From positions 7,784,984 through 7,848,983 of the forward strand of contig NC_092401.1 in assembly GCF_030028105.1 (NCBI RefSeq): a DNA stretch of 64,000 nucleotides, given 5' to 3'. Positions within the stretch are counted from its first letter, which is position 1; the number at the start of each line of letters is the position of its first letter. The translations under genes were made by a program, and so were the position numbers. The stretch is from Mobula birostris (taxonomy: Eukaryota). The notes below the pieces were generated by a model, which worked only from the letters and a program-made list of their open reading frames with translations, did not search any database and had not been told where the DNA came from. Shown piece after piece: positions 1 to 59,332 of the stretch.

Positions 1-902
1 ATCCACAGTTTTACGCTCAGACGGGGAGTCGGAATGGATCACCGAGAGGCACGTGGTCTGCAACATATCAGCCCGTGTCCAGTCCTCAATACTGAACATG
101 GGAGTAGACAGCAGTAACCGTGAAACAAAATGTCACACTACCCACATCATGGGCAAAATGACATATAAAATTCACAGTGTGAAACTGTTTGAAAGCCCGT
201 CCGTGAATTGTGTAAATAATTTACCAGGCGCCCATTTTTTATCTCTCTAGCCATCCTGCATTTGAAGTACGAATCAATGTGAAATTTAGCTTTTTGTTCT
301 GCCAAGCCAAAGACAACGAGGAAAACCGAGAAATAAGAAACGGTCCGCAGAATAAAGCACACAACGCAAAAATGCACAGTTACTTACACGAGAATATCTG
401 CAGACGCTGGAAATCCAAGCAACACGTACAACATGCTGGAGGAGCTCAGCAGGTGAGCCAGCATCTACAGAAAAGAGTCAACAGTTGACGTTTCGGGCCG
501 AGACCCTTCATCGGGACTTGTGCTTTGTGTGTGTGGCACAGATACTAAGTACAGTTATCGGATTCTGTGTAGTCCGCGTAAATACATGTATATTGAATGT
601 TTTTAAATCACTTTACCTACCTGTTACTATAAAGAGTAAAGTGAAAAAGAAAATTGATTCGCTCAGTGAAATCGGTTGAAATTCAAAACGTCGGCAGGAT
701 ATGTTGTTTTGCCAAAACCCTGTCTTTGATAAACTTCAGAAAGCTCCCGAAGAGAAATCTGTTTCTCACGACTAACAGCGTCTCTGTGGTCTCAGTGACT
801 ACAACAAGCTCCAATGCTCAAGGAAGTTCATTCAAGCGATAACAGACGGAAATGCCGGGAGCTGACTGTCTCACAGTCATCTGCAGATCTCCAGCTCACA
901 CT
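1..902 (-). pseudogene. Inverted paralogous copy of the ICAM-like gene 5' end (promoter/5'UTR, signal-peptide exon ending at 621, start of intron 1); no in-frame ATG visible
   Basis: Minus strand reads ATT TTC TTT TTC ACT TTA CTC TTT ATA GTA ACA G|gtaggtaaagtgatttaaaaacattcaatata (IFFFTLLFIVTG), versus ATT TCC CTT TTT GCT TTA CTC TTG GTG GCA ACA G|gtaagtaaattggttttaaatataatcaatata at 27016-27080. Intronic similarity (aactgtgcattt, gataaaaa..ggc.cc, gggctga, gtaaaactg) continues to the window start. Confidence 0.7.
420..520 (-). mobile_element. Penelope-type 3' tail with a degenerate hammerhead motif, inserted in the paralog's intron 1
   Basis: Matches the tail at 50258-50356; minus strand AGTC-CCGATGA-AGGGTCTCGGCCC-GAAACGTC-AACT at 483-518 (core U4 changed to C). 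Confidence 0.8.
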
Positions 903-25961: not shown

Positions 25962-26289
25962 TGTAAAAACTAACTGCGAGCTAGCTTGTCCTCCGCCTCT
26001 TCTCATCGAAGCCTCTCGAGTAAAAGCCTCAAAGCTCCACTCCTTCACTGGCCCACTCACGCTCTGGTTGCTTTCCATGAAGCAGCAGAGAAATTCATTG
26101 ATGAGTTTGTCAAGGTTATCCTGATGAAAATCTAACTCACTGAATGGCTACATCAGTAATTCAGAGTTGGAAATAATCGTTTTTCCAAGCTATTTGATTA
26201 CATTATTCCAAATTCTGGAAAAATCCAAAATCCGAAACACTTCTGGCAACAAACATTTCGGACTTCCCTCAATCTGTATTACCTTAACC

Positions 26290-26430
26290 CAGGGGTGGCC
26301 AACCTTTTACATTCCATGAGCCAATTTTTTCACTCACGAGTTCAGATGCGCCATACAACTCTTGCACCCCAATTCAATTCTTGTAAAAATGTTAATATAG
26401 AACTCGTGCATGAAAAAATTGACGCACAGA
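26290..26430. mobile_element. hAT-type MITE fragment
   Basis: caggggtggccaacctttt terminus typical of hAT/Charlie MITEs; no second TIR found. Confidence 0.45.
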
Positions 26431-26799
26431 ATGTAACAGGTTTAGCTGCCTTAACCCGATCCCCCGAATGTTACAGTTGAGGCACCTACACAAACTCTAA
26501 AATTTACTTCTGACTCCCCCGCAATGGGAGAAAGAACACCTCCACTCACGTTGATATTCAAAATAAATTCTACAGTGAAGGTAGGTTAGTTTTAGTGACC
26601 GTGTTGGGGATGCAATGCCAGGAACAAGCTGACGCTGTACCGGAGAATTAAGAGATTCAGAGCTGATGTTGAAAGTTGAACTGTATACATGGTAACAAAC
26701 TGCGCATTTTGCACAATGCACAAACTTGTCATGTTCCAGAAAAGCAAGGTATTCATGAACCGAAGTTTTACTAGTCGATCAGTAGTTATGCAACAACTG

Positions 26800-26997
26800 T
26801 AGATGTCCGAATGTTAAATAAAGAGCCCGAGTTACTGCCCGAAGGGGCGCGGTCCGCGAAACTTCCATCCCGGAGGCGCTGCCACCTCGTCACTGCTCGA
26901 TACCGCCAAGCAGATCAGTACTGGCTCTTCGCGTTGATTTCGGGACTTTTTAAAAAGTTAATCAAAATCGTTCAACATTTTCGTTTGAGATTTGATT
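26800..26997 (+). promoter_or_regulatory. Proximal promoter/5'UTR of the ICAM-like gene
   Basis: Locally CpG-rich; TATA-like ttaaataaa at 26814; ETS core AACTTCC at 26860-26866 conserved in both paralogous repeats (822-828, 1311-1317); kappaB-like gggactttt at 26942. Confidence 0.55.
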
Positions 26998-27049
26998 ATG
27001 ATGTATTTCAGGTTGATTTCCCTTTTTGCTTTACTCTTGGTGGCAACAG
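26998..27049 (+). CDS. ICAM/VCAM-like gene exon 1: signal peptide
   Basis: ATG ATG TAT TTC AGG ... GCA ACA G|gtaagt = MMYFRLISLFALLLVAT(G); hydrophobic core; phase-1 donor. Confidence 0.85.
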
Positions 27050-28129
27050 GTAAGTAAATTGGTTTTAAATATAATCAATATATTTGCACAGAGACACACA
27101 GCGTTAGAGTGTAACTACACACACAAACTGTGCATTTCGGATTGTGCGCTACTGAGTGGTTTATTCAACGTGGACTCTATCTCGTTTCCAATTTCCTTGG
27201 CAATATTTATTTTGGCAAAACAGAAATTTAACGTTAGCTTAAATTCCGCTGAAGAATGGCGAGGAAGATAGAAATAAAAACAAGGCACCGAGCAAAATAG
27301 GTGCACGATTCAGGAATTAAATTTAAATTTAAGAATATATCTCATTATTTTACTCATTACGTCAAAAGCACTTTTAGTCCGTTTCTCAGTCCCTGGTACT
27401 CTGTGTTCTTTCAGTAATCTGTACATTCGATCACTGTTGAGCGCTGGGCTGAGTCTGACCGCGGGTCCGGTTTTGACTCCGTTTACAACCCTGTAACTTT
27501 GTGTAAAACTGCAACAGCCACTAAAGTGCACATAGCCCGAGTTTCTGTACGTCATTCCGATATAACAGTCTGACCAGTCACCATAACGCACCCTAATGCA
27601 AGGTCTCCACTGGGAACTCCGTCAGTTCCTTTTCCCGACACAAAAGCAATCGACCCGCTGAGTTTGTTGTTCCAGAATCCCGCATCTACAGTCACCAGTG
27701 TCTCTATGTGCCCATTCTGCTCTGGCACAAAGCCAACCCTTACAAATTACTTTCCCGGGGTCCCCAAGGGCTTTGGGGCAGCTGGAAGAAACAACATTTT
27801 TCAAAAGCGCCAATGCTGGAAATCCGAAATAAAGGGAGTTATGAAGCAAGTTCTTCAACCAGAAATGTTAACTTTGTTTTTCCTTCCTGGATGCTTCCTA
27901 GTCTACTGGGTGTTTCCAGCATTTTCTGGATCATTTCAGATGGAAGGGGCTGCAAGCAGCTTCTTCTCCCCCAATTTCTTAATTAACAACACCTCCCAAA
28001 GGTGCCACACCAATCACAAAAAAGGACATGGGAGCTGGTGCATGGGATTACCTACACTAGTACATTCCTCATCTGGTTACACATCATTCTGACCCAGAGA
28101 TACACTGGCTTCTTCATTAGGTAACTCTT

Positions 28130-29909: not shown

Positions 29910-30185
29910 GTAAACTGAATGGATTTGAGGTTTCCATCAAAACAAACACCCCAGTGGTGGAATTTGGACACTCCCTGGAGGTGACCTGCAGTACAATGTT
30001 TAACAACCCAACAATGATTATGGAATACAAACCAGGGATGAATCCCAGCAGAACTCATGGTGATAAGTTCATTACAGACCAATTTCTGAGTATCCAGAAA
30101 TGGGATCTGACAGTGCCATGTACTGTAATCTGTTCATCTGCAGGAAAGGCAGTGCAGGAGAGGAAACTGGTGGTTCCAGTGTACA
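29910..30185 (+). CDS. ICAM/VCAM-like gene exon 2: Ig domain 1 (ICAM-N type)
   Basis: ctctggcag|GT AAA CTG ... GTG TAC A|gtaagt; VVEFGHSLEVTCSTMFNNPTMIMEYK...VPCTVICSS...VPVY; 276 nt, phase 1-1. Confidence 0.9.
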
Positions 30186-37920: not shown

Positions 37921-38232
37921 ATCGAAACTTAAGCATTGTTCCACCTCCTGACGTGCTGGAAGTTAACAAACCATATCAGCTGGAGTGTACCGGCCCGAAG
38001 GTCTATCCAAAGAACAAACTCGTACTCACCTGGCTCAGAGGGAGTGAGACTATAGCAAATATTTCCACAGAGAAACCAGGTTTCCCAGATGATGGTCCAC
38101 TGAAGAACGTCCTTCATTTCAATGCAAGTATTTCAGACGATAGACTGGTGTACACCTGCTTGGCAGAGTTGATCTTGGACTCTGACACGACCAAATGGAT
38201 CGCAAATGCATCTGTGACTCTGCAAATGTACT
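37921..38232 (+). CDS. ICAM/VCAM-like gene exon 3: Ig domain 2
   Basis: cctttgacag|AT CGA ... ATG TAC T|gtgagt; YQLECTGPKVYPKNKLVLTWLRG...LVYTCLAEL; VYP motif as in VCAM-1 D2; 312 nt, phase 1-1. Confidence 0.92.
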
Positions 38233-39904: not shown

Positions 39905-40198
39905 CTTTTCCACAGCCTCCAAGGATCCTTAACAGAGACTCTGTAGAAGTAAATCAGGAGACCACATTGACGTGTGAGGTCTCAAATGTCTACCCTACTG
40001 AGAAGGTGAGATTAAGGTGGTTTCAGGATGGTGAGGAATGGAGTTCAGTTGCCAGTAGATCAAATCCCACCACAGTCCAGACAACAGCTACATGGACACC
40101 ACGAGAGACCGGTGTGACTGAACTCAACTGCATGGCAGATTTTGAGGACTATCCATCAGTTTCATCAAAGAATGATAGCATTACCATTGATGTGTATG
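39905..40198 (+). CDS. ICAM/VCAM-like gene exon 4: Ig domain 3
   Basis: gtattgcag|CT TTT CCA ... GTG TAT G|gtaagt; TTLTCEVSNVYPTEKVRLRWFQDG...ELNCMADF...ITIDVY; 294 nt, phase 1-1. Confidence 0.92.
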
Positions 40199-43100
40199 GT
40201 AAGTATGCTGGATAATTAAGGACTTTGACAAGGCAGTAACCTTTTAGTTTCCTACCTGCTCTGAGACGGCCAATCAGGCAGCAATACGGAACAGATTCTC
40301 AGTCAATCGGTATTTGAAACAAAAATCAATAGGCATATAGGGAAAAAGGAATATAGGCTTTAAGGGAGGGAGTTGGGTGGTCTGATGTTATTGTTCCTGT
40401 TTTTTTCCATGAGGGAGGGTTTGTAGGCAGTAAAGAAAGTTCTCAGTAACTGCAGGGACATCCTGGTTATCTAAGAGAGTGGGCCGAGGGCTGGTCAATG
40501 GTGTTCAATCCTGATCCGTTTGAGGGTGGGGCTCATACAATGAATGGAACCACCCTGGCGAGTGTAGTGGAACAAGTATTGAACAGGCAGGGACTGCCAA
40601 AGAGTCACCTTCATAGACATAGATACGTAGTCACATGTGAGTAGTTGGGTGGTGCAGGCTCGTAGACCCCGAATGGCCTGTAACCATACTATATTTCTAA
40701 ATAAAATAAAATTATATCCTTGAATCATTACAACAGAGGCCATTCTGCCCATCAAGACCTTCCCTGCTCATTTCAAATTAATCCATTTAGCTCCATTAGC
40801 CTTCCAGCCTACTTTCCCTTGAGCCCATCCTTCAGCCTGATTGATTCTGCTCCCTCAGCCTTCAGGAAGAGAGTTCCACCTCACAAACACACTCCACACG
40901 AACGGGTTCTGCTCAACTCCCCACGGTTGCCGGGCACTCTGACTCGAGGGACTTCGAACCATCCACTGACAGGGTCACCTGATCACTATTTGCTCTGTCT
41001 AAACCCGAACCAAGTCAAATCATCTTCAATTCAGTTCAAGTTTAATTGTCATTCAACCATAGATGAATACAGGCAAACGAGAGAGCATTAATAATGGGGT
41101 CAAGGTGCTAAAACACATTACCAACAGTCACACACAAGAACACATTCGCGGAATGAAAGAGTCCAGTTTTGCTTCCCACCTGGAATCACCGCGGTTTGAT
41201 GCCCAGTTCTTGCATATACAGATCAACAAATCCATATAGAACATCACTAAATTACAACGACACAGATTATACACCTGTATAGTCCAGACCCCGAGTCACT
41301 GTGATCATCTCTCAACTGGCCCTGATGCCAAACAGCCGCTCCGCCATATGTGGCACAGAGGCCCAGTCCTCAGAAATACAGGAATATATCGAATAATAAT
41401 AACACAAGCAGACAAATCTATATGCATATAGTCCAGACCCCTCAGTTCAAATGGAATCTTCAGTCAACCACAACAGCGCTGTGCTGCTCACGGTAGAGCA
41501 TGACGGCTCGGACGCCTCACCCCCCCCCCCCCCCGGCGGCGGAAAAGCAAGTGACCCCGCAGCGTGAGGCCCAAGTTCATTCAGTGGCCCCTCTGACTCC
41601 CCGTGACCTCTCTGACACCCTTCCCATGACCCCTGTCTGAACCCCCCGCACTCCTTCTCTGCCTCCCTGTGCCCTCTCTGAATTCCGTCCTGCAACCCCT
41701 CTCTGCCCCATCCTGTGACCCCTCTGTAACCCCCACCTCCAACGACTCCATTTCCTGACCTACCCCCTTCTCCCCTCACCCTTCCCAACTAAAATGTTGC
41801 ATGTCTCATGTTCCCACTCATCAAAGACATGTGCCCTCGTGTTCAAAGTTCAGAGTAAATTTACTATCAGAGTTCATACATGTCACCACATAGAACCCTG
41901 AGATCATTTGCCTCTGGGCATCTTCAGCAAATCCACAGAATAGTAACCATAACAGGATCAATCAGATGTCAATGAACTGTGCAAATACAAATTGAAATAA
42001 ATAGCAATAAGTAACCAGTTCAAGTTCAAAGTACATTTATTAACAAAGAATGTATAAATTATACAACCTTCAGACTGGTTTGCCCACATGCAGCCACACA
42101 GCAAGAAAACCGAAAGAACCCAATTAAAGAAGATAAAAATAAAAGTCCAGCACCTAATGTGCAAGAGAAAGGGGGAGAGAGGGGACACAAATCATGCAAA
42201 CAATTGAAGCAAGCAACAATATTTCCAACTAAATTGAGTCCTTAGACCCAAACCCTGGAGTAGGCTAGAGTGAGCCCAAAGCCTCACTTATCAGATAATG
42301 AGATAAAGAGTCCTTAAAGTGAGATCACTGGTTGTGGAACATCTCAATGGATGGGCAAGTCAGTGTAGTTATCCACTTGGTAGTTAATCCCCAACTCTGG
42401 TGGCGGGGGGGAGGAAATTGAGCACATTTACCCAGCCTATGCCCCTTATGATTTTATACACCTTTATAAGATCAGCTCTCAGTCTCATACACTCCAGATA
42501 ATACAGTCCGAGGCTGTCCATCATGTCCCTGTGACTCAGTTTAACAGGATTTTTCAAGGAGCAAATGAAGAGGTGTGGGTGCACTGGGACACTTCAGAAA
42601 CAAAAAACACAAAATGTTGGCAACACACAAGTCAGTCCAAATTAACAGTTCAGATCGATGACTCTTTGTCAGGCACTTCTGGGGACCTCAGCTTGGCTAT
42701 GCTGGATGTTCCAGAGAACATGGAGTGGGGAGAGGTTCGAGGGAATAAGAGATCCTGAACCAAGTCCAGGATGGGTTCTGATACCTGCCCAAAACTTCTA
42801 GAAGGTGGTATCTGATTTCTAAATGACATTGAACCCATGAACACTACCTCACTACTTTTGGTTCTACACTACTTATTTTAACTATTTAGTAGACATATAA
42901 ATAAATATATATACTTGGTGTAAATCAGCTATGTTCCTTTATAATTATTGGTAATCTGCTTCATTGTTCTGCTGCCGTTAAGGTTAACAAATCGTCATTG
43001 AGCTGTACCGGTGGTATTAAATCTGATCTGTAACTTTTCACCTTTCCTTTCTGTTGCTATTTCCAAGGTGGGAGTATTGGAATTATACAATTTCTACCAA

Positions 43101-43419
43101 TATTGAAATAATAATGCTCATTTTCTCTCCTTTGAGGATCTCAGGGAATGAATGGGCTCAGTGTAGGGAGGTTTAAAAGAGGTGAAGCTCAATATCAAAA
43201 TGCATGATGCACTGCCACCTTGTGGGATCACTATGAACTGCAGGCTTCCTCAGCTCTCCTCAAAAGCACGAAGTTCCCAATGCTCAGCAGGCATTAATGC
43301 TGTAATGCACAACTTTCACTGTTCTAAATGTGAACCACTGCCAACTACAGGCATGAAGCTTACTGTTGTTAACCCCTGACAGAGTTGAGGAAATTATTCA
43401 GTAGATGACAAAGTCATCA

Positions 43420-43750
43420 CCCTAACACAGTGGTGTCAAGGGAACAACCTCTCCCTCAATGTCACAAAAACAAAGGAAACAATTGTGGACTACAGAAGGA
43501 ACGGAGACAGGCTAACCCCTATAGACATCAATGGATCTGGGCTGAGAGGGTGACGAGCTTTAAGTTCCTCGGCATAAAGAGCACAGAGGATCTCACGTGG
43601 TCTGTACATACCAGCTGTGTGGTGAGAAAGACACACGGGCACCGCTTTCATCTCAGACGGTTGAAGAAATTTGGTGTGGACCCCCAAATCATACAAACTT
43701 TCAATAGGGGTACAACTGAGAGCATCCTGACTGGCTGCATCACTACCTGG
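43420..43750 (+). mobile_element. L2/Rex1-Babar-type LINE fragment
   Basis: cagtggtgtcaagggaacaacctctccctcaatgtcacaaaaacaaagg (WC..NNLSLNV.KTK); SFKFLGI..TEDLTWS. Confidence 0.75.
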
Positions 43751-44269
43751 TTTAAGCTGAGAGGGGGGGAGATGAAATAGGAACTTGAGGAGCACCTTTT
43801 TCACCGAGAGGGTATATGGAATAAGCTACTAGATGAAAAAGATTCAAAGGTTTATTTATTATCACAGAATGTACGCACTATATAACTCTGAGACTCATCT
43901 TCTCCAGATAGCCAGGAAACAAAGAAAAATATGGAAGCTATTCAAGCCCCTCCCCCACAAAATAATTCATAAATCATGGCAAATTTCAATGACAATGGCA
44001 ATGAGCATCAAATCTCTCCCCCCACGCAGAAAAACAAATCTATTCATTGTGAGAACATCAAACCCCACCCCTCGTGCAAAGAAAACTTACAAATCCAGCC
44101 AAATTTAAATCGCACAGTGGCAACAAGAGTATCAAACTTCAAAATTAACTCACTCTTATGGCAAAAAGAAAGAATGTGCAAAAACACAGATTGTAAAAGC
44201 CATAAAACTGCAAAAGAGTCCATAAATCACAGTGCTTCGGTAACTAGGTTGATAACATTTAAAAAACCA

Positions 44270-45300
44270 TAGCCATAGGAACAGAATTAGGCCATTTGGC
44301 CCATTTGGCTCCGTCATTTCATCATGGCTGATCCATTTTGCCTCTCAGCCTCAATCTCCTGCCTTCTCCCCGTATCCCTTCATGCCGCAACTAATCAAGA
44401 ATCTATCAACCTTCGCCTTAAGTATACCCAGTGACTTGGCCTCCACAACTGTCTGTGGCAACAAATTCAACAGATTCACCTCTCTCTGGCTGAAGAAGTT
44501 CTTCCTTATCTCCATTCGAAAAGGACACCCCTCTATTCTGTGGCTGTGTCCTCTGGCCCTGGACTCTGCCACTCTCCTCTCCAAATCCACTCTATCGAGA
44601 CTGTTCAACATACGTTGGGTTTCAATGAGATTCCCCTCATCTTACTGAACTCCAGTGAGTTCAGACCCAGACCCATCAAAGCTCCTCATCTGACAAGCCT
44701 TTCAACGCAGGAATCATTTTCGTGAACCTCCTTTGTAACTTCTCCAGTTTCAGTACATCCTTTCTCAGATAAGGGGCCTAAAACTGCTCATAATACTCCG
44801 TGAGGTCTCACCAGTGCTTCGTAAAGCCTTAACATTACCTCTTTGCTTTTATATTTGAGTCCTCTCAAAATGGTCTGAAAGGCACTTGGGCAGGTCCATG
44901 GATAGGAAAGGTTTAATCACATTTAGATCAAACATGAGCATGTAAGTGACATTGACTATGGAATGATTGTTGGTGCCAGACAGTGTGGTTTGAGTATCTC
45001 AAGCTGCCAACCTCCAGAGATTTTCATGCACAAGGAGTTGCAGAGATTGGTGCAAAAAACAAAACCTATCCAGTAGGTGGTGCTTCAGTGGTCAAAATCA
45101 CCTTGTTAACAGGAGAGTGCCAGACTGGTTCAAGCTGACAGGAAAGTGACAGGAACTCAAATAACCAGGTGTTACAACAGTGGTGTGCAGAAGAGCATCT
45201 CTGAATGCACAACATGTTGAAATGTGAAGAGGACGGGCTACAGCAGCAGAATACCATAGAAGGTCTTCAGGTATACCTAATAAAGTGGCCACTGAGTGTG
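44270..45300. mobile_element. CR1 3' fragment (-, 44270-44870) and Tc1-derived MITE (44940-45300)
   Basis: RMEIRKNFFSQREVNL; terminal cctaataaagtggccactgagtg. Confidence 0.7.
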
Positions 45301-45455
45301 TTTGACTTGCTGTGCTTGGTGGTAGCACAGGCTATTAAAGTAAAAGTCTCTCTTACTCTGAGAAGTGGAACTTGGTCAGCACCAAATATCACCAAGAAAT
45401 GATTCTGTGCTCTTAACTTTCAGCTTTTAATTTCTATTTCCAACCAACTTTACAG

Positions 45456-45700
45456 ATTCTCCAAGGAAAGCACAGATCTCGGGAAAGCAGGACTGGATTG
45501 AAGGGAAATCCCAGATTTTAACCTGTCGCGCAGATGCCAACCCAGTTCCGGAGGTGCGCTGGATCAAAGATGGAAAAACAATCAGTAGTGGTGAGACACT
45601 GCACATTCCCTCAGTCCAACTGGGAGACAGTGGTCAGTACATGTGCAGAGTCCGCAATGATATCGGTTCCACCAACTCCTCTCATCGTGCTTTTGAATAA
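45456..45700 (+). CDS. ICAM/VCAM-like gene exon 5: Ig domain 4, ending in a premature TAA with no canonical phase-1 donor
   Basis: aactttacag|AT TCT CCA ... ILTCRADANPVPEVRWIKDG...GDSGQYMCRVRNDIGSTNSS-HRAFE*(45698-45700). Both Ig cysteines and the Trp are intact. Confidence 0.85.
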
Positions 45701-46429
45701 GTATAGGAAGTTTCTTTGTGGAATAGACCATAAGACCATAAGACATGGGAGCAGAATAAGTTGCTTTATTCCCTGTCTGTACAATATCATTACACAGTCA
45801 GATCAAAAACAGAAGCAAAATATGCCCAGGGCACAAGGGTGAATTCTGTTCCTCTTCAGAATGGCAACTCTACAAAATGGAACTTCAGCTTAATGTCTGA
45901 GTTAAAGGACAGCACTGTGCCAATGTGCGACCTCCTGAGAACATCACTGTAAAGTCAGCCGAAATGAGGGGTGACAAACCCTTTTGGGGTCGTCTGTCTA
46001 AACTGGTGATGACCTTCTGAAAAATGTCTGTTGGGTGCCATGGTAATTTTGTGCTGAGATTATCAGGGATCAATTTCATTCACCATATACACAATATGGA
46101 TTTGGAATTTGCTCTGGTGTGTTGGTGAGTGAGTGACTGTGACAAAATACAACAACATTCAACACTACAAGAGAATAATATCAAAGATAAAGTTTAAAGC
46201 ATGAATGTGGAATAAAACATGCATAAATATTTAAATACAATCATGGATTTACAACGTGAACAGCATTATCAAAAATGGCTTAAAGTGTTTTCAGTGCAGT
46301 GACGTGATGGGGTTAATAGATATCATTGATTACTAAATCAGTTAAAATAGTTATGAACTCTACGAAAGAAAAAGGATGAGTCCTATTTTCTAGAGTCAAT
46401 ACCTTTATTTATGACTGGGACTTTATTAC

Positions 46430-47885
46430 TCTGTAGATAGAAGGTTGAGAAGAGATTGTATGGAGGAATCCAAAGTTATGAAGGGTCAATAGGGTAAATG
46501 CAAGCAGGCTTTTTCCACTGAAGTTGGAGTGATTACAACCAGAGGTCATGGGTTAGACGTAAAAGGTGAGGTTTAATGCAAACATGAGGGGAACTTTCTT
46601 CACTTAGAGGGACGTGATGGTGTGGATCAAGCTGCCAGCACAAGTGATGTTTACAAGCTCGACTTCAATGTTTATGCAAAGTTTGGATCAGTTCATGGAT
46701 GGTAGGGATATGGAGGGCTATGGTCCTGGTGCAGGTCAATGGGAGAAGGCTGTTTACAAAGTTTTGGCATGGACTAGATGGACCGAAGGGCCTGTTCCTG
46801 TGCTGTACTTTTCTCTGACTCTATTACAATGTGTAATTGTTATTTACACATAAGTAACAATTTGTGCATTCATTAAGTTACTATTAGTAAAAGTATAACA
46901 GAGACAGATTGAAATAAATGAAAAAACTCAAAGGAATCAAGGGGCATTGCTGCATGCCAACAAAGTTTCTGCCTGTGCCATCCTGGGCACACATGCCATA
47001 GGTTCACCACCACTCCGGCCTCGATATTGTGCTCCAGTCTCTGGCGTACAACTTCAATCCAGAACGGTTTGAAACAAGACTGGTGGTGCTCCCATGAGCC
47101 ACAGTGGACACAGTGAGTTAGTGCTGAGATACTTCACCTCGTGGCATGAATGAGGGTTGGTGTTTCCTGGAGAAAACTGTGGCCTGGTGGTGAATCACAC
47201 CCCCACCCCCTACCAGAGAAGCAGACAGTGGGACTGCTCCCTGCACAAGGCTCTCTTAAAATGCTTCTGGTTAAAAGGAGCTCATGCGGCTCAAAAGAAT
47301 CTGTTGTTTCTCAGCCTGACGACAATGAGAGTTCTGGGCTCATCGCAGAGAGAGATGGTTTGTTTACTGAGAGTGAACTCTGGATTGAAGGCTCTCAGGA
47401 CTTTGACCACAGCTGCTCTGAAGTGAGCTCAGCACACAGTCAAATTCGATTTTCCAGCCTTTTGGAGTCACAGTGTAGTGATGTCCAGTCGCCTCATTAT
47501 AGGAAAGATGAAGAAGTTTTAGAAATGGTGCAGGGGAGATTTACCAGGACGCTGCCTGGATTAGAGAGCATATCTTCTGTGGAAAGGTTGAGTGAGCTCT
47601 TTGGAGCCAAGGAGGATGATTGCGTAAGATTGTAAGAGGCGTAGGAACAGTGGACAGCCAGCGCCTAATTCCCCGGCAGGTAATGGCTGTAGCAGAGGAC
47701 ATCCTTTTATGATGAGCCACGGAGTCAGAGGCAAGTTTTTACATAGGCACGTAAATGAAAGAAGAATGGAGGACGATGGGCTGTGTAGGAGGGAGGGGTT
47801 GGGTTGTCGATGGAATAGGTTTATAAAGGTCGGTACAACATCATGGGACAAAGGGCCCACCCCGTGCTGTACTGTTCTATGTCCT
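46430..47885 (+). mobile_element. Two CR1 3' fragments (46430-46830, 47460-47885)
   Basis: accagaggtcatgggtta; PHYRKDEEVLEMVQGRFTRTLPGLES; tails ending ctgtgctgtact. Confidence 0.7.
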
Positions 47886-47919
47886 ATGGGAGGGGCTGGT
47901 TAATTTCACTCTTTTCCAG

Positions 47920-48201
47920 ATAAACCACAAAACACAACTATATCAGTAAATAACAAAACCACGTCCAGGTTTTCAGTCTTCATCAGAGTAGATGATGAAG
48001 TTACAATCACCTGTCACTCCAGTGGAAACCCCCAGGTAACAATGAAGTTGGAAAGATCCGGTCAGGGAGTCACAGGGGAAACTGACCTTCCTGGGATTCT
48101 CCACATTTCCCAGGCAACATCAGAACATCAAGGAATTTACAAGTGTAGAGCCAGCAATAAATTTGGAACGGATGAGGAGCAAGTGGAAATCAAGATGGAA
48201 G
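47920..48201 (+). CDS. ICAM/VCAM-like gene exon 6: Ig domain 5 (not in the ORF track)
   Basis: cttttccag|AT AAA CCA CAA AAC ACA ... ATG GAA G|gtcagt; DKPQNTTI...VTITCHSSGNP...HQGIYKCRASNKFGTDEEQVEIKME; 282 nt, open, phase 1-1. Confidence 0.9.
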
Positions 48202-50317: not shown

Positions 50318-50356
50318 AGTCGACGTTTCAGGCCGAGACCCTTCGTCATCAGGACT
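50318..50356 (-). ncRNA. Minimal type I hammerhead ribozyme motif in the Penelope 3' tail
   Basis: AGUC-CUGAUGA-(CGA)-AGG GUCUCGG CCU-GAAA-CG-UC^GACU: stem I AGUC/GACU, stem II AGG/CCU, core CUGANGA and GAAA, GUC cleavage triplet (predicted cut between 50322 and 50321). Confidence 0.75.
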
Positions 50357-50649: not shown

Positions 50650-53600
50650 CTAGCGGAAGTTAGAGAAGTTGATGTTCATGCCATCAGGTTGGAGGCTACC
50701 CAGACGGAATATAAGGTGTTCCTCCAACCTGAGTGTGGCTTCATCTTTACAGTAGAGGAGGCCGTGGATAGACATGTCAGAATGGGAATGGGATGTGGAA
50801 TTAAAATGTGTGGCCACTGGGAGATCCTGCTTTCTCTAGCGGACAGAGCGTAGATGTTCAGCAAAGTGGTCTCCCAGTCTGCGTCGGGTCTCGCCAATAT
50901 ATAAAAGGCCACATCGGGAGCACCAGACGCAGTATATCACCCCAGTGGACTCACAGGTGAAGTGTTCCCTCACCTGGAAGGACTGTTTGGGGCCCTGAAT
51001 GGTGGTAAGGGAGGAAGTGTAAGGGCATGTGTAGCACTTGTTCCGCTTACACGGATAAGTGCCAGGAGGGAGATCAGTGGGGAGGGATGGGGGGGACAAA
51101 TGGACAAGGGAGTTGTGTAGGGAGCGATCCCTGCGGAATGCAGGGGGGGGGGGAGGGAAAGATGTGCTTAGTGGTGGGATCCCGTTGGAGGTGGCGGAAG
51201 TTACGGAAAATAATATGTTGGACCCGGAGGCTGGTGGGGTGGTAGGTGAGGACCAGGGGAACCCTATTCCTAGTGGGGTGGCGGGAGGATGGAGTGAGAG
51301 CAGATGTACGTGAAATGGGGGAGATGCATTTAAGAGCAGAGTTGAAAGTGGAGGAAGGGAAGCCCCTTTCTTTAAAAAAGGAAGACATCTCCCTCGTCCT
51401 AGAATGAAAAGCCTCATCCTGAGAGCAGATGCGGCGGAGACGGAGGAATTGCGAGAAGGGGATGGCGTTTTTGCAAGAGACAGGGTGAGAAGAGGAATAG
51501 TCCAGATAGCTGTGAGAGTCAGTAGGCTTATAGTAGACATCAGTGGATAAGCTGTCTCCAGAGACAGAGACAGAAAGATCTAGAAAGGGGAGGGAGGTGT
51601 CGGAAATGGACCAGGTAAACTTGAGGGCAGGGTGAAAGTTGGAGGCAAAGTTAATAAAGTCAACGAGTTCTGCATGCGTGCAGGAAGCAGCGCCAATGCA
51701 GTCGTCGATGTAGCGAAGGAAAAGTGGGGGACAGATACCAGAATAGGCACGGAACATAGATTGTTCCACAAACCCAACAAAAAGGCAGGCATAGCTAGGA
51801 CCCATACGGGTGCCCATAGCTACACCTTTAGTTTGGAGGAAGTGGGATGAGCCAAAGGAGAAATTATTAAGAGTAAGGACTAATTCCGCTAGACGGAGCA
51901 GAGTGGTGGTACAGGGGAACTGATTAGGTCTGGAATCCAAAAAGAAGCGTAGAGCTTTGAGACCTTCCTGATGGGGGATGGAAGTATATAAGGACTGGAC
52001 ATCCATGGTGAAAATAAAGCGGTGGGGGCCAGGGAACTTAAAATCATCGAAAAGTTTAAGAGCGTGAGAAGTGTCATGAACATAGGTCGGAAGGGATTGA
52101 ACAAGGGGTGATAAAACAGTGTCGAGGTATGCAGAAATGAGTTCGGTGGGGCAGGAGCAAGCTGAGACAATAGATTGGCCAGGACAGGCAGGTTTGTGGA
52201 TCTTGGGTAGGAGGTAGAAACGGGAAGTGTGGGGTGTGGGAACTATAAGGTTGGTAGCAGTGGATGGGAGATCCCCTGAGCGGATCAAGTCGGTGATGGT
52301 GTGGGAGACAATGGCCTGGTGCTCCTTAGTGGGGTCACGATCGAGGGGTAAATAAGAGGAGGTATCCGCGAGTTGTCGCTGTGCCTCGGCAAGGTAGAGG
52401 TTAGTACGCCAGACTACAACAGCACCCCCCTTATCGGCAGGTTTAATAATAAGGTTAGGATTAGTGCGGAAGGAGTGGAGAGCAGAGCGTTCCAAAGAAG
52501 TGAGGTTGGAATGGGGACAAGGTGTGGTAAAGTCGAGATGGTTGATGTCCCGTCGGCAGTTAGCGATAAAGAGATCCAGAGCAGGCAGAAGACCAGAGCA
52601 GGGTGTCCATGAAGAAGAGGAGGGTTGAAGACGGGAGAAGGGGCCATCGGTGGGGGTGGAAGAGTCCTTGCCGAAGAAGTAGGCTCGGAGACGGCGGAAG
52701 AAAAGTTCCGCATCGTGGCGAACACGGAACTCGCTGAGGTGTGGGCGAAGGGGGACAAAGGTGAGGCCCTTACTGAGAACAGAGCGTTCTGCCTCCGACA
52801 GTTGAAGGTCGGAGGGGATGGTAAAGACCCGGCATGGATGAGAGCTGGGATCAGAGGGGGGAGGGGGGAGGCTGGGGGTGTCAACAGAGAGGGGAGGGTT
52901 GGGGTGAGAGGAAGATGGAGCCTCTGAGGGCCCAGGAGTCGACGGTGGGATCTGAGGAAGACGGGGCTGCAGAGTGGTGGTGGGGGAAGGGGAGACAGGA
53001 GTCACAACAGCAGCACATAAAGACCCGGCCTGGAGTTCAAGGCTGGCATCGCAGTTGGTGGTTGCGCAATCGCTGTGAAGGTGTCCATGGTCGTTGCTGG
53101 AGTCCGGGTTTTGAATATGCCCTGAGGTGTTGGAGCCGGTGAGATCAATGGCAGGGGCCGCAATCTGAAGTTCATGCCTGCTAGCATCGGGGCCGGCAGG
53201 CTCTGGAGTCCGTAGATGTAGGATCTTGCGATCTTTGCCTAACATGACAAAGTCAAAAAAATGGCGATTGCAGGCGTGAATCCGACGGAGGATGAAATAA
53301 CGGGTAGGACCATTACAGACGGCGAAGAAAGTGTCCCGAAGGTGTGGAAGGGTCTGGGATAGGGACACCAAGTACCTCCTCATGGCGGAGAGAGTCGCCT
53401 TCAGAGCTTGACGGGAGAAGCGGTGAGAGGCAGAGTCAATAAAATGTGAGTACCTGGGATCCTCAGAAGGTCCAAATTGAGAGGCTTGGAAACGAATCCT
53501 AAAGCCAACTGGAGTAAGTTGGCGACGGAGGAACGTTCCAAGAAAGGATATATGGCTGTGATAGCAAGTCTGAGTCAAAGTGTGGTCGAAAAGTTGAAGA

Positions 53601-53689
53601 GCCGAAGAAATTACAGATGGGGAGCAGTGAGAGATGGTTTCACTGAACTCCCGTCGAAGAGAGGATCTAAACTTCTTCGGTGTAGGCAT
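50650..53689 (-). pseudogene. Penelope ORF (N-terminal extension, RT, GIY-YIG endonuclease) with one frameshift and one stop
   Basis: IKPADKGGAVVV, FYLLPKIHK, MDVQSLYTSIPH, GVAMGTRMGPSYA, RYIDD, VYYKPTD; CKRNKCYTC linker; GVIYCVWCSRCGLLYIGETRR. -1 shift at the G11 run (51143-51153); TAG at 50836-50838; natural end QPDGMNINFSNFR* at 50650. Confidence 0.9.
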
Positions 53690-53861
53690 CATGTGTAGTA
53701 TGTGTTTTTTAGAAAATCTGAGAAAGCATGGTAGATTAAACAGTAAGGTACATGCAATCTACAAGATTCCGGGATTTTCAGAAGGATCAGTAGCTTTACA
53801 ATTGATGTATTTGCCTGAGACGGTTAATGACTGTGTAATGGCTTTTGTGCAAGTTCCCCAG

Positions 53862-54070
53862 GTGATGATTGGAAAATGGTGTTGATGATCTTGCTACCCA
53901 TCCTAACAGTGTTACTCACGCTGGTATTCGCCTGTGTCCTAATGAACAGAGCTCGGAAAACAGGATATCACAATGTCATAAATGCAGTGCCCCACAAAAT
54001 TCAGGAAATCCCTTCTGTAATCTTTTCCTTTAACAGAAGTGAATTCAAACTTCTAAACAATAACTACTAA
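53862..54070 (+). CDS. ICAM/VCAM-like gene exon 7: transmembrane helix and cytoplasmic tail
   Basis: aagttccccag|GT GAT GAT TGG; MVLMILLPILTVLLTLVFACVLM then stop-transfer NRARKTGYHNVINA; stop TAA at 54068-54070. Confidence 0.88.
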
Positions 54071-57580: not shown

Positions 57581-59332
57581 ATTTACCTTTGTTAGACTGT
57601 AACATAGTTATCAACCTTCAACTTTAACTAGAAAATATTTACAAACAAATCATTTAAAACGTAGACCCAACAAAGTCAAATAAGGGCAACACAGGATTTA
57701 TATACATAACCTGTAATTAATTATTTAAATGAAGAAGAATCCCTAATTAAACAACATGTATGCATATTTACTCAAATATTATTGAAATAGCACATACACA
57801 ACAGAAGTAAGTTCAAAACTTTGTTGATAGGAGCACAGCAGAGGGGTGAGGAAGCACCGAAGTCTCAAACTTGGCTGCAATCTAGAACCTGCAGACCGGA
57901 GAAGAGGAGCAACTCACTGTTGGTGGGGAGGAGAATTGCTGAAACTGTGGAAGTACTGTGTGTAAATTGTGTACAAGGACTGCTGTGTAGATTGTGCAAG
58001 ATGTTCAGAAGTGGGAGGGTGCATCTTGTGGTCTTTCAGTTTCTGTTTGCTGGTTGTGAGGACTGGGATTTTTAACCAATAACTAACGGTGAGACTGTGC
58101 TTTATTCCGAGACATGAGCACTGGGACTGAAATGCTATTCCTGATAAGGAGTGTGATGCTCAGTTTGTTTTTATACAGGACACTTCTGCACTGGGGCTAA
58201 TAGTAAATAGTTTTCTGATAGTAAACTCAAAGTGGTAATATATTTTGGACTTTATTGTGATTGTGGGGATCGCCTCTGATCTGAACTGCATATATGCACA
58301 ACTGGACAATGAATGAACCCATGAATAATATCTCACTTTTTTTTGCCCTCTTTTTGCACTAAATTCAACTTTTTACATATACGACTATTTCTTATTGTAA
58401 TTTATAGTTTTTTTATTTATTGCCACAAAACACCAAACTTCATGACGCACTATATAGCAGTGATATTGAATTCAGATTCTGATTCTAAAGTGGAAGATCT
58501 GAATTCAGTCTGTGATTGAGTTTGGGCTTCTATCATGGGAGAGGCTGTTTAATCTCATCCTTTGCCAGATGCACCACAAAACATAACTACGTGGTAAATA
58601 CAGAAACTGGATCTGACTTTCCAAGAAGTCAATAAAAACACTTTGTGCATTAGAGGAGATGATCTCAATCAAGACATTCATCCTTCGGGACTTCTCCCCA
58701 TTTTTCTTTGCTAAAAACTTGGATGAAAGCAAAAATGAAGGGTTATGCTCTGTGTAGGAGGGAAGGGTTAGATTGATCGGGGAGTAGGTTAAAAGTCGGC
58801 ACAACATTGTGGGCCAAAGGTGTACTGTTCTATGTTTCCTGAGCAACATCAGAACATGAAGGAATTGATACTCATGGAGCTGGAAACAGACATTGAACTG
58901 ATGAGAAGGAACTGGAAACTCAGGATTAAAAGTCAGCTATTTTTTCTTATTCACAATTCACATTAGGGATACAGTATACAATTAGCGTTTCCTTCACTCC
59001 AAGTAAATCTCGAGAGCTGAGTTGCTTTACAAAGTTCTATTAACTGTAATCCATATTTCACCCTCTTCTTTATAAGCCTCTTCCATCCATGTGACTGAAA
59101 GCAGAACAAACAGAAAATAGTGCCTGTCTTTGACACCCTGCTCTGTAACCACTCTCCACGCTCATTCATATCAGAGCTCAAGCAGCCTCCCATCCGGTCA
59201 TTTCTCATGTGCTGAAGAAGCTGTTCACCGCCACTCTGTTTTCCCAGACTGTAGGGACAATAATTCTGGAAGAGGAGAGTGGACTCCATGAATCCACACG
59301 CTGCCAGACTGTGGGCAGTTCACTCATCTGTA

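What the first reader, a model, noticed from the sequence alone, without database searches (positions are those of the whole stretch)
45456..45710. Fourth Ig exon disabled only at its 3' end: soluble ICAM-like decoy, or domain loss by skipping
Seen: the exon has a good acceptor and an intact Ig core, then reads GSTNSS-CAT CGT GCT TTT GAA TAA. Aligned to exon 6 (GTDEEQVEIKME-G|gt), the ancestral end looks like ...TCT nnnnnC ATC GTG CTT TTG A|gtaagt; observed is TCT C ATC GTG CTT TTG A ataagt. That implies a ~5-nt deletion plus a G-to-A change at donor +1, two separate lesions. Because all exons are phase 1-1, skipping yields a clean 474-aa four-Ig membrane protein. Inclusion yields a 392-aa signal + 4-Ig protein with no TM. 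Inference: a genetically encoded secreted adhesion-molecule decoy, or domain-number evolution caught in progress.
Basis: partly seen in the sequence, partly recalled or inferred. Interest (0 to 1): 0.7.

Follow-up and report, generated by a model that had tools for sequence, protein, structure and literature searches.

The report
Broken Ig exon in ray ICAM-like gene
One copy of a multi-copy ICAM-like adhesion gene of a ray has recently lost five bases and the splice signal at the end of its fourth antibody-like exon, while sister copies still use that exon intact; this is ordinary gene-family turnover, and nothing supports a purpose-built secreted decoy.

Summary
Exon 45456-45700 has a good acceptor, an intact I-set Ig core, an in-frame TAA at 45698, and ATAAGT where a donor should be.

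New evidence: contigs from two RNA-like runs of the same species carry a near-copy of this exon, joined exactly to the next exon. Its tail reads ...CAC CAT GCA GAG ATT TTG T|. So the window lacks 5 nt (AGAGA) and the donor. Its ancestral frame (IVLL) is wrong; the tail is AEIL-Y.

Those transcripts are not from this copy. They differ at 7/229 and 9-11/136 positions, and no window-type exon contig was seen.

The four listed window-only substitutions in the exon are all synonymous, and the other six exons are intact. The damage is therefore recent.

Unchecked earlier scan notes place the window in a large tandem ICAM-like array with 4-, 6- and 8-Ig members and decayed ones.

Best reading: a young pseudo-exon in one paralogue. 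It is either skipped, giving a four-Ig protein, or the copy is silent. The secreted-decoy idea has no support.

The parts
26998..27049 (+). Coding part of the signal-peptide exon (MMYFRLISLFALLLVAT-G), with donor CAG|GTAAGT, phase 1
Evidence: A scan for ATG plus a hydrophobic core plus a phase-1 donor.
29910..30185 (+). Ig1 exon, ICAM N-terminal type
   Evidence: Pfam ICAM_N 23 bits against a cut-off of 21. AG/GT borders.
37921..38232 (+). Ig2 exon
   Evidence: Weak Ig_3/Ig_2 matches. AG/GT borders, phase 1.
39905..40198 (+). Ig3 exon, ICAM D2-type C2 domain; donor ATG|GTAAGT
   Evidence: Pfam ICAM1_3_5_D2 36.6 bits against a cut-off of 27.5. Donor score 6.5.
45456..45696 (+). Fourth Ig exon (I-set), now a pseudo-exon: acceptor and core intact, 3' end damaged
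   Evidence: A sister-copy transcript covers 45456-45684 with 7 differences and then diverges.
45690..45691 (+). Site of the 5-nt loss: AGAGA is present in the expressed sister copy between these two bases
   Evidence: Letters between the joint sides (table 5c). Pairwise alignment.
45697..45702 (+). ATAAGT, a relic of the exon's donor with A instead of G at +1
   Evidence: The sister copy splices from the homologous position to 47920. The sister copy's own intron letters were not seen, so G-to-A is an inference.
45698..45700 (+). In-frame TAA created by the frame shift
47920..48201 (+). Fifth Ig exon (I-set); acceptor used by the sister-copy transcripts; donor AAG|GTCAGT
   Evidence: Joint 45684(+17 letters)->47920.
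53862..54070 (+). Transmembrane and cytoplasmic exon with the stop codon
   Evidence: Hydrophobic stretch MVLMILLPILTVLLTLVFACVL in the joined protein.

Best explanation
The window holds one member of a tandem family of ICAM-like adhesion genes in a ray. In this copy alone, a recent small mutation cluster at the 3' end of the fourth Ig exon did three things. It removed five bases (AGAGA), which shifted the frame into a TAA. It changed the last exon base. It left ATAAGT where the GT donor should be. The acceptor is good but no usable donor remains, so the exon cannot be defined as an internal exon. By established knowledge, 5' splice-site loss in vertebrates mostly causes exon skipping. Any mature mRNA of this copy should therefore join 40198 to 47920 and encode the 474-aa four-Ig membrane protein. 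The exon is then a young pseudo-exon left in the intron. Shown: the lesions, the intact state in expressed sister copies, the intact rest of the gene, and past purifying selection on the exon. Inferred: that this copy is transcribed at all, and that it skips the exon.
For: 1) establish the TAA, the lack of a usable in-frame donor, and the phase-1 architecture (392 aa included, 474 aa skipped). 2): in two RNA-like runs of the same species (X5, X10), one contig each (depth 312 and 156) runs from a few letters before 45456 (8 in X5's) through a 97%-identical exon. It then carries 17 letters, CCATGCAGAGATTTTGT, and enters the next exon exactly at 47920. Exon depth is 150-600 against about 10 in the intron. 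Translation gives ...GSTNSSHHAEILYKPQNTT, in frame. 3) Those contigs differ from the window at 7/229 positions (exon 5) and 9-11/136 (exon 6). At diagnostic positions such as 45580 and 47961/47962 every contig differs from the window. The intact tail occurs nowhere in the window. The transcripts therefore come from other copies. 4) At four exon-5 sites the window alone differs from the species' own transcripts and from two other species. All four are synonymous; the chance of that under neutrality is 0.003-0.006. The exon was thus constrained until recently. 5) The other 1,425 coding bases and all 12 splice sites are intact. If the gene had drifted neutrally for the whole 1.7% of window-specific divergence, about 4 disabling lesions would be expected, with P(0)=0.015. 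Both visible lesions fall in the one exon that skipping makes dispensable. 6) The other species' contig (X6, record 24) is 608 letters on 604 window positions with 6 gap letters. That means 5 inserted and 1 deleted, which fits that species still having the 5 nt. 7) Precedent: functional mouse ICAM-1 isoforms arise by skipping whole Ig exons, including one lacking D4 (PMC10215618). 8) Unchecked scan notes describe 4-, 6- and 8-Ig ICAM-like genes and decayed paralogues on both sides of the window.
Against: No contig of the window's own exon 5 or exon 6 was seen in either RNA-like run, so expression of this copy, skipped or not, is not shown. Contigs drop rare variants, so this is weak evidence of absence. 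The 40198->47920 junction could not be examined because the stretch limit kept exon 4 out of the one read-laying run. X5 and X10 are not on record as RNA, and the tool marked X10 'probably DNA'; I call them RNA from the exon/intron depth contrast and the exact exon-exon joint. The letters at 45685-45700 were not checked against genomic reads of this species. The state of the other two species at that spot was not printed. Paralogue and divergent allele cannot be told apart with the data I have.
Confidence: 0.5

Rival explanations
1. The whole copy is a very young pseudogene or a silent gene. The exon-5 lesion is simply the first hit in a paralogue that is no longer used, and no four-Ig protein is made.
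For: No window-type exon contig appears in two RNA-like runs in which sister copies reach depth 150-490. Unchecked scan notes describe decayed paralogues in the same array. A decayed relic of an Ig5-type exon lies at 58835-58926 in this window. Exon 6 carries window-only non-synonymous changes (47961/47962 T vs V, 48096 I vs V).
Against: Six other exons and all splice sites are intact. The disabling lesions are confined to one exon; for a dead gene the second hit had about a 15% chance of falling there. Only two libraries of unknown tissue were examined, and as contigs.
Confidence: 0.27
2. The lesion is not fixed, or not real. Either the assembly is wrong at 45685-45700, or the window is one haplotype (a null allele) of a locus whose other allele is the expressed, intact form.
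For: Transcripts of the same species restore the frame. Low-depth intron contigs of the RNA-like runs are 99-100% like the window and share its lack of the 9-nt TTTCACTCT that the other two species have behind 47903. The expressed copy is therefore very close. Genomic reads over the site were not examined.
Against: The transcripts differ from the window at many other positions (3% in exon 5, 7-8% in exon 6). The window-only differences are all synonymous, which sequencing errors would not be. X10 shows two expressed variants, neither equal to the window; X10 shares its sample code with the best DNA holders, though whether that sample is the assembly's source is not established. A 5-nt loss plus three nearby substitutions outside any homopolymer is not a typical consensus error. 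DNA runs of the species hold 87% of the stretch's sampled words.
Confidence: 0.15
3. The exon is used as an alternative last exon. Transcripts run on past 45700 to an intronic poly(A) site and encode a 392-aa secreted four-Ig decoy.
For: The acceptor is intact, and the open frame ends right after the Ig core. Soluble ICAM-1 from a frame-shifted transcript is known in humans (PMC10215618). An RNA-like contig covers 45733-46515 at low depth.
Against: There is no AATAAA or ATTAAA before 46211, which is 511 nt past the stop. That contig does not adjoin a window-type exon 5 contig (none was found) and runs on past 46211. The product loses the last four G-strand residues (EILY becomes FE-stop), which carry the core hydrophobics of an I-set domain by my knowledge of the fold; Pfam's match stops at profile position 85 of 90. 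The lesion looks like damage to a former internal exon (relic donor), not a designed terminal exon. Sister copies use the exon internally.
Confidence: 0.05
4. A cryptic in-frame donor, C|GTGCTT at 45687 or G|GTCAGT at 45633, rescues the exon.
For: Both leave phase 1.
Against: The 45687 donor scores -5.7 against 3.2-6.5 for the gene's real donors. The 45633 donor would remove the second cysteine. No joint from either site appears among the 15 best-supported joints that one search printed (401 others were not shown). The one joint near there carries 17 extra letters, which shows it belongs to another copy.
Confidence: 0.03

Closest known systems
Mouse ICAM-1 membrane isoforms made by skipping whole Ig exons (review PMC10215618)
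   Same: An ICAM-type gene with one Ig domain per exon, so omitting an exon keeps the frame. A D4-less membrane isoform exists and is functional.
   Different: In the mouse the skipped exons are intact and skipping is regulated. Here the exon is genetically broken, so skipping would be obligatory, and it has not been observed.
Human soluble ICAM-1 transcript with a partial exon-6 deletion that shifts the frame and stops before the transmembrane region (PMC10215618)
   Same: A small deletion near the end of an Ig-coding exon causes a frame shift and an early stop upstream of the membrane anchor.
   Different: That is a transcript-level variant of a gene with intact splice sites and normal polyadenylation. 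Here the deletion is genomic, the donor is gone, and no poly(A) signal is near.
Birth-and-death evolution of tandem immune-type Ig-superfamily gene arrays, with pseudo-exons and a variable number of domains (general knowledge; unchecked scan notes s1-146087, s1-146404, s1-145368)
   Same: A tandem array with members of 4, 5, 6 and 8 Ig domains and decayed copies. This copy carries a young disabling lesion while sister copies are expressed.
   Different: Nothing essential. This is one more instance, caught early, with only one exon hit.
VCAM-1 six- and seven-domain forms produced by alternative use of the domain-4 exon (from my own knowledge, not checked here)
   Same: An Ig adhesion molecule in which one Ig exon is optional, with I-set-like membrane-proximal domains.
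   Different: The N-terminal domain here matches Pfam's ICAM_N. No VCAM-specific test was possible. In VCAM-1 the optional exon is intact.

Membership tests
ICAM family (ICAM-like adhesion receptors) | N-terminal ICAM-type Ig domain | tested here: met
   Pfam PF03921 ICAM_N, 23 bits against a curated cut-off of 21, on exon 29910-30185. The match is marginal and partial (profile positions 4-35). No PDB chain matched by sequence at E<=1.
ICAM family (ICAM-like adhesion receptors) | ICAM D2-type C2 domain after the first domain | tested here: inconclusive
   PF21146 ICAM1_3_5_D2 scores 36.6 bits against a cut-off of 27.5, but on the third Ig exon (39905-40198). The second Ig exon has only weak generic Ig matches.
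ICAM family (ICAM-like adhesion receptors) | Type I membrane protein: signal peptide, tandem Ig domains, one transmembrane helix, short tail; one Ig domain per phase-1 exon | tested here: met
   Joined model; signal exon found.
ICAM family (ICAM-like adhesion receptors) | Integrin binding through an acidic residue of domain 1 | not testable with these tools
   Domain 1 has a Glu in ...TMIMEYKP... at about the place of ICAM-1's IETP, by eye and from memory only. No binding data exist.
Pseudo-exon (disabled exon of an otherwise intact gene) | In-frame stop or frame shift relative to intact homologues | tested here: met
   A 5-nt gap against the expressed sister copy, with TAA at 45698.
Pseudo-exon (disabled exon of an otherwise intact gene) | Loss of a splice site | tested here: met
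   ATAAGT at the homologous exon end; no usable in-frame GT. The sister copy's genomic donor was not seen.
Pseudo-exon (disabled exon of an otherwise intact gene) | Rest of the gene intact | tested here: met
   A 474-aa open frame over six exons with canonical AG/GT borders.
Pseudo-exon (disabled exon of an otherwise intact gene) | Absent from the mature mRNA of that gene | tested here: inconclusive
   No window-type exon-5 contig in X5 or X10, but no window-type exon-6 contig either. The expression of this copy is unknown.
Secreted isoform through an alternative terminal exon | Poly(A) signal shortly downstream of the stop | tested here: not met
   The first AATAAA is at 46211, 511 nt after the stop, and there is no ATTAAA.
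Secreted isoform through an alternative terminal exon | Transcripts that end after the exon | not testable with these tools
   All the runs are kept as contigs, which cannot show RNA ends.

The most novel reading that the evidence does not exclude
Domain-number evolution caught in the act. This copy is still a working gene that has just turned from a five-Ig into a four-Ig ICAM-like receptor by losing the splice donor of one exon. The dead exon, still 96-97% like its living sisters, remains in the intron. This would be a dated example of how the 4-, 5-, 6- and 8-Ig members of the ray array arise.
Probability: 0.35. Interest if true: 0.4.

Novelty: new member of a known kind. Interest (0 to 1): 0.25.

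Why it matters
The main value is as a check on method. A reader working from sequence alone predicted a 5-nt deletion and a lost donor, and transcripts of sister copies bear that out. Biologically it adds one dated data point to how Ig-domain number changes in tandem adhesion or immune receptor families of cartilaginous fish. A phase-1 exon can be lost by a single small lesion without breaking the gene. It does not reveal a new mechanism. Both exon-skipped membrane isoforms and frame-shifted soluble forms are already known for mammalian ICAM-1.

Tried and rejected
1) The search of protein representatives with the exon peptide. The ranking sums over Ig repeats, so the best 150 were all giant multi-Ig proteins and no orthologue surfaced. 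2) search for homologous proteins with the 89-aa open stretch found nothing; the length window excludes full-length relatives. 3) Two attempts to widen the length window by aligning the exon peptides under a long first row. With a fish CD22-like protein as first row (A1), only teleost CD22-like proteins came back. With a 510-aa transposon ORF from the window (A2), only three transposon proteins of sharks and rays came back. So no RefSeq model of this gene or its orthologues was obtained. The joined 474-aa protein has no reference and I did not type it in. 4) A PDB sequence search of domain 1 found nothing. The same search for the exon-5 domain gave only generic I-set matches (DSCAM, contactins, titin). 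6) Cryptic donors at 45633 and 45687 are rejected on score and for lack of a joint among those printed. 7) There is no other copy of these exons, or of the intact 17-letter tail, in the window. 8) The joints 45299->45729-45733 seen in the other species' DNA contigs link a Tc1-like transposon end to a high-copy repeat. Their anchors are only 25-26 letters, so I treated them as repeat noise. 9) The first two calls to the look-up of sequencing runs failed as busy.

Full report
**What is in the sequence**

The window is vertebrate DNA, rich in retroelements. On the + strand lies a seven-exon gene:
- a signal exon at 26998-27049, with donor CAG|GTAAGT
- five Ig exons at 29910-30185, 37921-38232, 39905-40198, 45456-45700 and 47920-48201
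- a transmembrane and tail exon at 53862-54070

All internal exons are phase 1.

Pfam places ICAM_N on the first Ig exon (23 bits against a cut-off of 21). It places the ICAM D2 domain on the third (36.6 against 27.5) and I-set on the fourth and fifth.

The exon in question starts behind a good acceptor (ttacag|AT). It has an intact I-set core. It ends ...TCC TCT CAT CGT GCT TTT GAA TAA, followed by gtatagg. At the position that would give phase 1, the intron side reads ATAAGT.

A rough donor matrix, with frequencies taken from my own knowledge, scores the gene's real donors at 3.2-6.5. Only two in-frame GTs lie inside the exon, and both are unsuitable:
- 45633 scores 1.6 but would delete the second cysteine.
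- 45687 scores -5.7.

**Evidence from sequencing runs**

The look-up of sequencing runs listed four kinds of run:
- four DNA runs of the same coded species (organism A, up to 87% of the sampled words)
- four small runs of organism A whose kind is only guessed as RNA
- DNA runs of a close relative (organism B, 36% of words, about 3% divergence)
- DNA runs of more distant relatives

All are held as contigs.

X5 and X10 behave as RNA. Depth is 150-600 over the two exons against about 10 in the unique intron. One contig in each run (depth 312 and 156) starts a few letters before 45456 (8 in X5's). It follows the exon to 45684, carries 17 letters that lie on neither side (CCATGCAGAGATTTTGT), and continues exactly at 47920, the acceptor of the next exon.

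Put in frame, this reads ...GSTNSSHHAEILYKPQNTT. Aligned with the window, the tail is CCATGC AGAGA TTTTG T against TCGTGC ----- TTTTG A|ATAAGT.

So an expressed version of this exon exists in the same species. It has five more bases, stays in the present frame and splices normally. Its reconstruction of the lost tail in the +2 frame (IVLL) is not: the G strand is AEIL-Y, and the deletion lies between 45690 and 45691.

**These transcripts are not from the window's copy**

- The exon-5 contig differs from the window at 7 of 229 positions.
- The exon-6 contigs, two variants in each run, differ at 9 and 11 of 136 positions.
- At diagnostic positions (45580; 47961 and 47962; 48072, 48083 and 48096) every contig in X5 and X10 differs from the window.
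- X10 shares its sample code with the best DNA holders. Whether that sample is the one the assembly was made from is not established. It shows two exon-5 variants (5 and 11 differences in 182), and neither equals the window.
- The intact 17-letter tail, and any second copy of these exons, are absent from the window.

Hence at least two expressed near-copies lie elsewhere. Earlier first-stage notes of this scan are unchecked by me. They describe ICAM-like genes with four, six and eight Ig domains and decayed paralogues, from about 130 kb before the window to more than 100 kb beyond it. That would supply such copies.

Other scan notes call the genome a manta-type ray. My only test of this is indirect. 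The named relatives of a transposon ORF in intron 6 are from Mobula hypostoma (84% identity), Hemitrygon and Chiloscyllium.

**How old is the damage?**

At four exon-5 positions (45481, 45580, 45607, 45664) the window alone differs from X5, X10, organism B and organism C. All four differences are synonymous third-position changes. Only 22-28% of random changes in this exon would be synonymous, so the probability of four out of four is 0.003-0.006. One caveat applies: the tool prints only the best-supported differences.

The exon was therefore under purifying selection along the window's own lineage for most of its separate history.

The remaining 1,425 coding bases and all splice sites are intact. 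If the gene had drifted neutrally for the whole 1.7% of window-specific divergence, about four disabling lesions would be expected, with P(0) about 0.015 (assuming indels at 12% of substitutions).

The disabling changes sit in a 13-nt cluster: substitutions at 45685, 45687 and 45696, the 5-nt loss, and the donor. They may be one complex event rather than two independent hits.

Organism B's contig across the exon is 608 letters on 604 window positions with six gap letters. That means five inserted and one deleted. This fits organism B still having the five bases, but the table did not print the place, so it is suggestive only.

**Mechanism**

With a good acceptor and no donor, the exon cannot be defined as an internal exon. 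The usual outcome of 5' splice-site loss in vertebrates is skipping (established knowledge). Here skipping is in frame and gives a signal peptide, four Ig domains, a transmembrane helix and a tail.

Any inclusion through downstream GTs (45701, 45797) would carry the TAA upstream of two further junctions, and so should be subject to nonsense-mediated decay (inference).

Use as a terminal exon is unlikely for three reasons:
- The first AATAAA is 511 nt past the stop, and there is no ATTAAA.
- The product would lose the last four G-strand residues.
- The relic ATAAGT shows that the exon was formerly internal.

I therefore favour a young pseudo-exon in an otherwise intact paralogue that either skips it or is no longer expressed. 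The data cannot separate these two, because no contig of this copy's own exon 5 or exon 6 was seen, and contigs drop rare variants.

A null allele or an assembly error remains possible. The synonymous pattern of the window-only differences and the many other differences from the transcripts argue against a simple error.

**Comparison with known cases**

Mouse ICAM-1 makes functional membrane isoforms by skipping whole Ig exons, including one without D4. A human soluble ICAM-1 transcript arises from a partial exon-6 deletion that shifts the frame. The present case differs in being a genomic lesion in one member of a tandem array. That is ordinary birth-and-death evolution with a change in domain number.

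**What led nowhere**

All four large protein searches failed to retrieve the public model of this gene or its orthologues. The reasons were repeat-summed ranking and the length window. The joined protein has no reference, and I did not type it in.

The exon 4 to exon 6 junction could not be examined, because the 6,000-letter limit kept exon 4 out of the single read-laying run.

**Verdict**

The lesion reconstruction is largely confirmed. The decoy reading is unsupported. The skipping reading is plausible but unproven. Interest is low to moderate.

Noticed in passing
window 58835-58926 (+): A decayed relic of the 3' half of an Ig5-type exon, 73% identical in DNA to 48110-48201. It reads ATSEHEGID..TDEKELE with stops, and lies 4.8 kb downstream of the gene's stop codon. 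It looks like a leftover of a further paralogue or an old duplication.
   Followed up: partly
window 47903 (17 nt upstream of the exon-6 acceptor): Organisms B and C both carry 9 extra letters (TTTCACTCT, a tandem copy of the preceding letters) in the polypyrimidine region. The window and the low-depth intron contig of X5 lack them.
   Followed up: no
window 45200-45299 and 45720-45823: The exon is flanked on the left by the end of a Tc1-like transposon (...CCTAATAAAGTGGCCACTGAGTGT, ending at 45299). A very high-copy repeat starts 20 nt after the stop. DNA contigs of other species join 45299 to about 45730 with short 25-26-letter anchors, probably from other repeat copies.
   Followed up: partly
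window 51077-53758 (-): An 894-aa open frame on the opposite strand inside intron 6. Its first 510 residues match 'uncharacterized' proteins carrying PF28514 from Mobula hypostoma (84% identity), Hemitrygon akajei and Chiloscyllium punctatum. This is presumably a retroelement ORF; a first-stage note places a Penelope element's 3' end at 50318-50356.
   Followed up: partly
window 27841-27909 (+): A second signal-peptide-like open stretch (MKQVLQPEMLTLFFLPGCFLVYW) with a GT behind it lies 800 nt after the real signal exon. It ends in phase 0, so it cannot join the phase-1 Ig1 exon. It may be a relic or an alternative first exon.
   Followed up: no
window 47961-47962: The window's exon 6 has a codon changed at two adjacent bases (ACG Thr). 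Both RNA-like runs and both other species read GTG Val. Together with 48096 (Ile vs Val), this shows window-specific amino-acid change in the exon that would follow the skipped one.
   Followed up: partly
window 1-902 versus 26000-28000: A first-stage note (s1-145974) an inverted copy of an ICAM-like promoter, exon 1 and intron 1. A blastn of this gene's 26000-28000 against the window found no match there at E<1e-5. If the copy is real, it is of another gene's 5' module or is too diverged for blastn.
   Followed up: partly
window 45456-45637 and 47930-48065, in runs X5 and X10: Two expressed variants of exon 6 occur at a depth ratio of about 1.8:1 in both libraries (X5 313:173, X10 162:84). 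In X10 the two exon-5 variants show the same ratio (148:80). This fits either two alleles or two co-regulated paralogues. In X5 only one exon-5 variant was laid.
   Followed up: no
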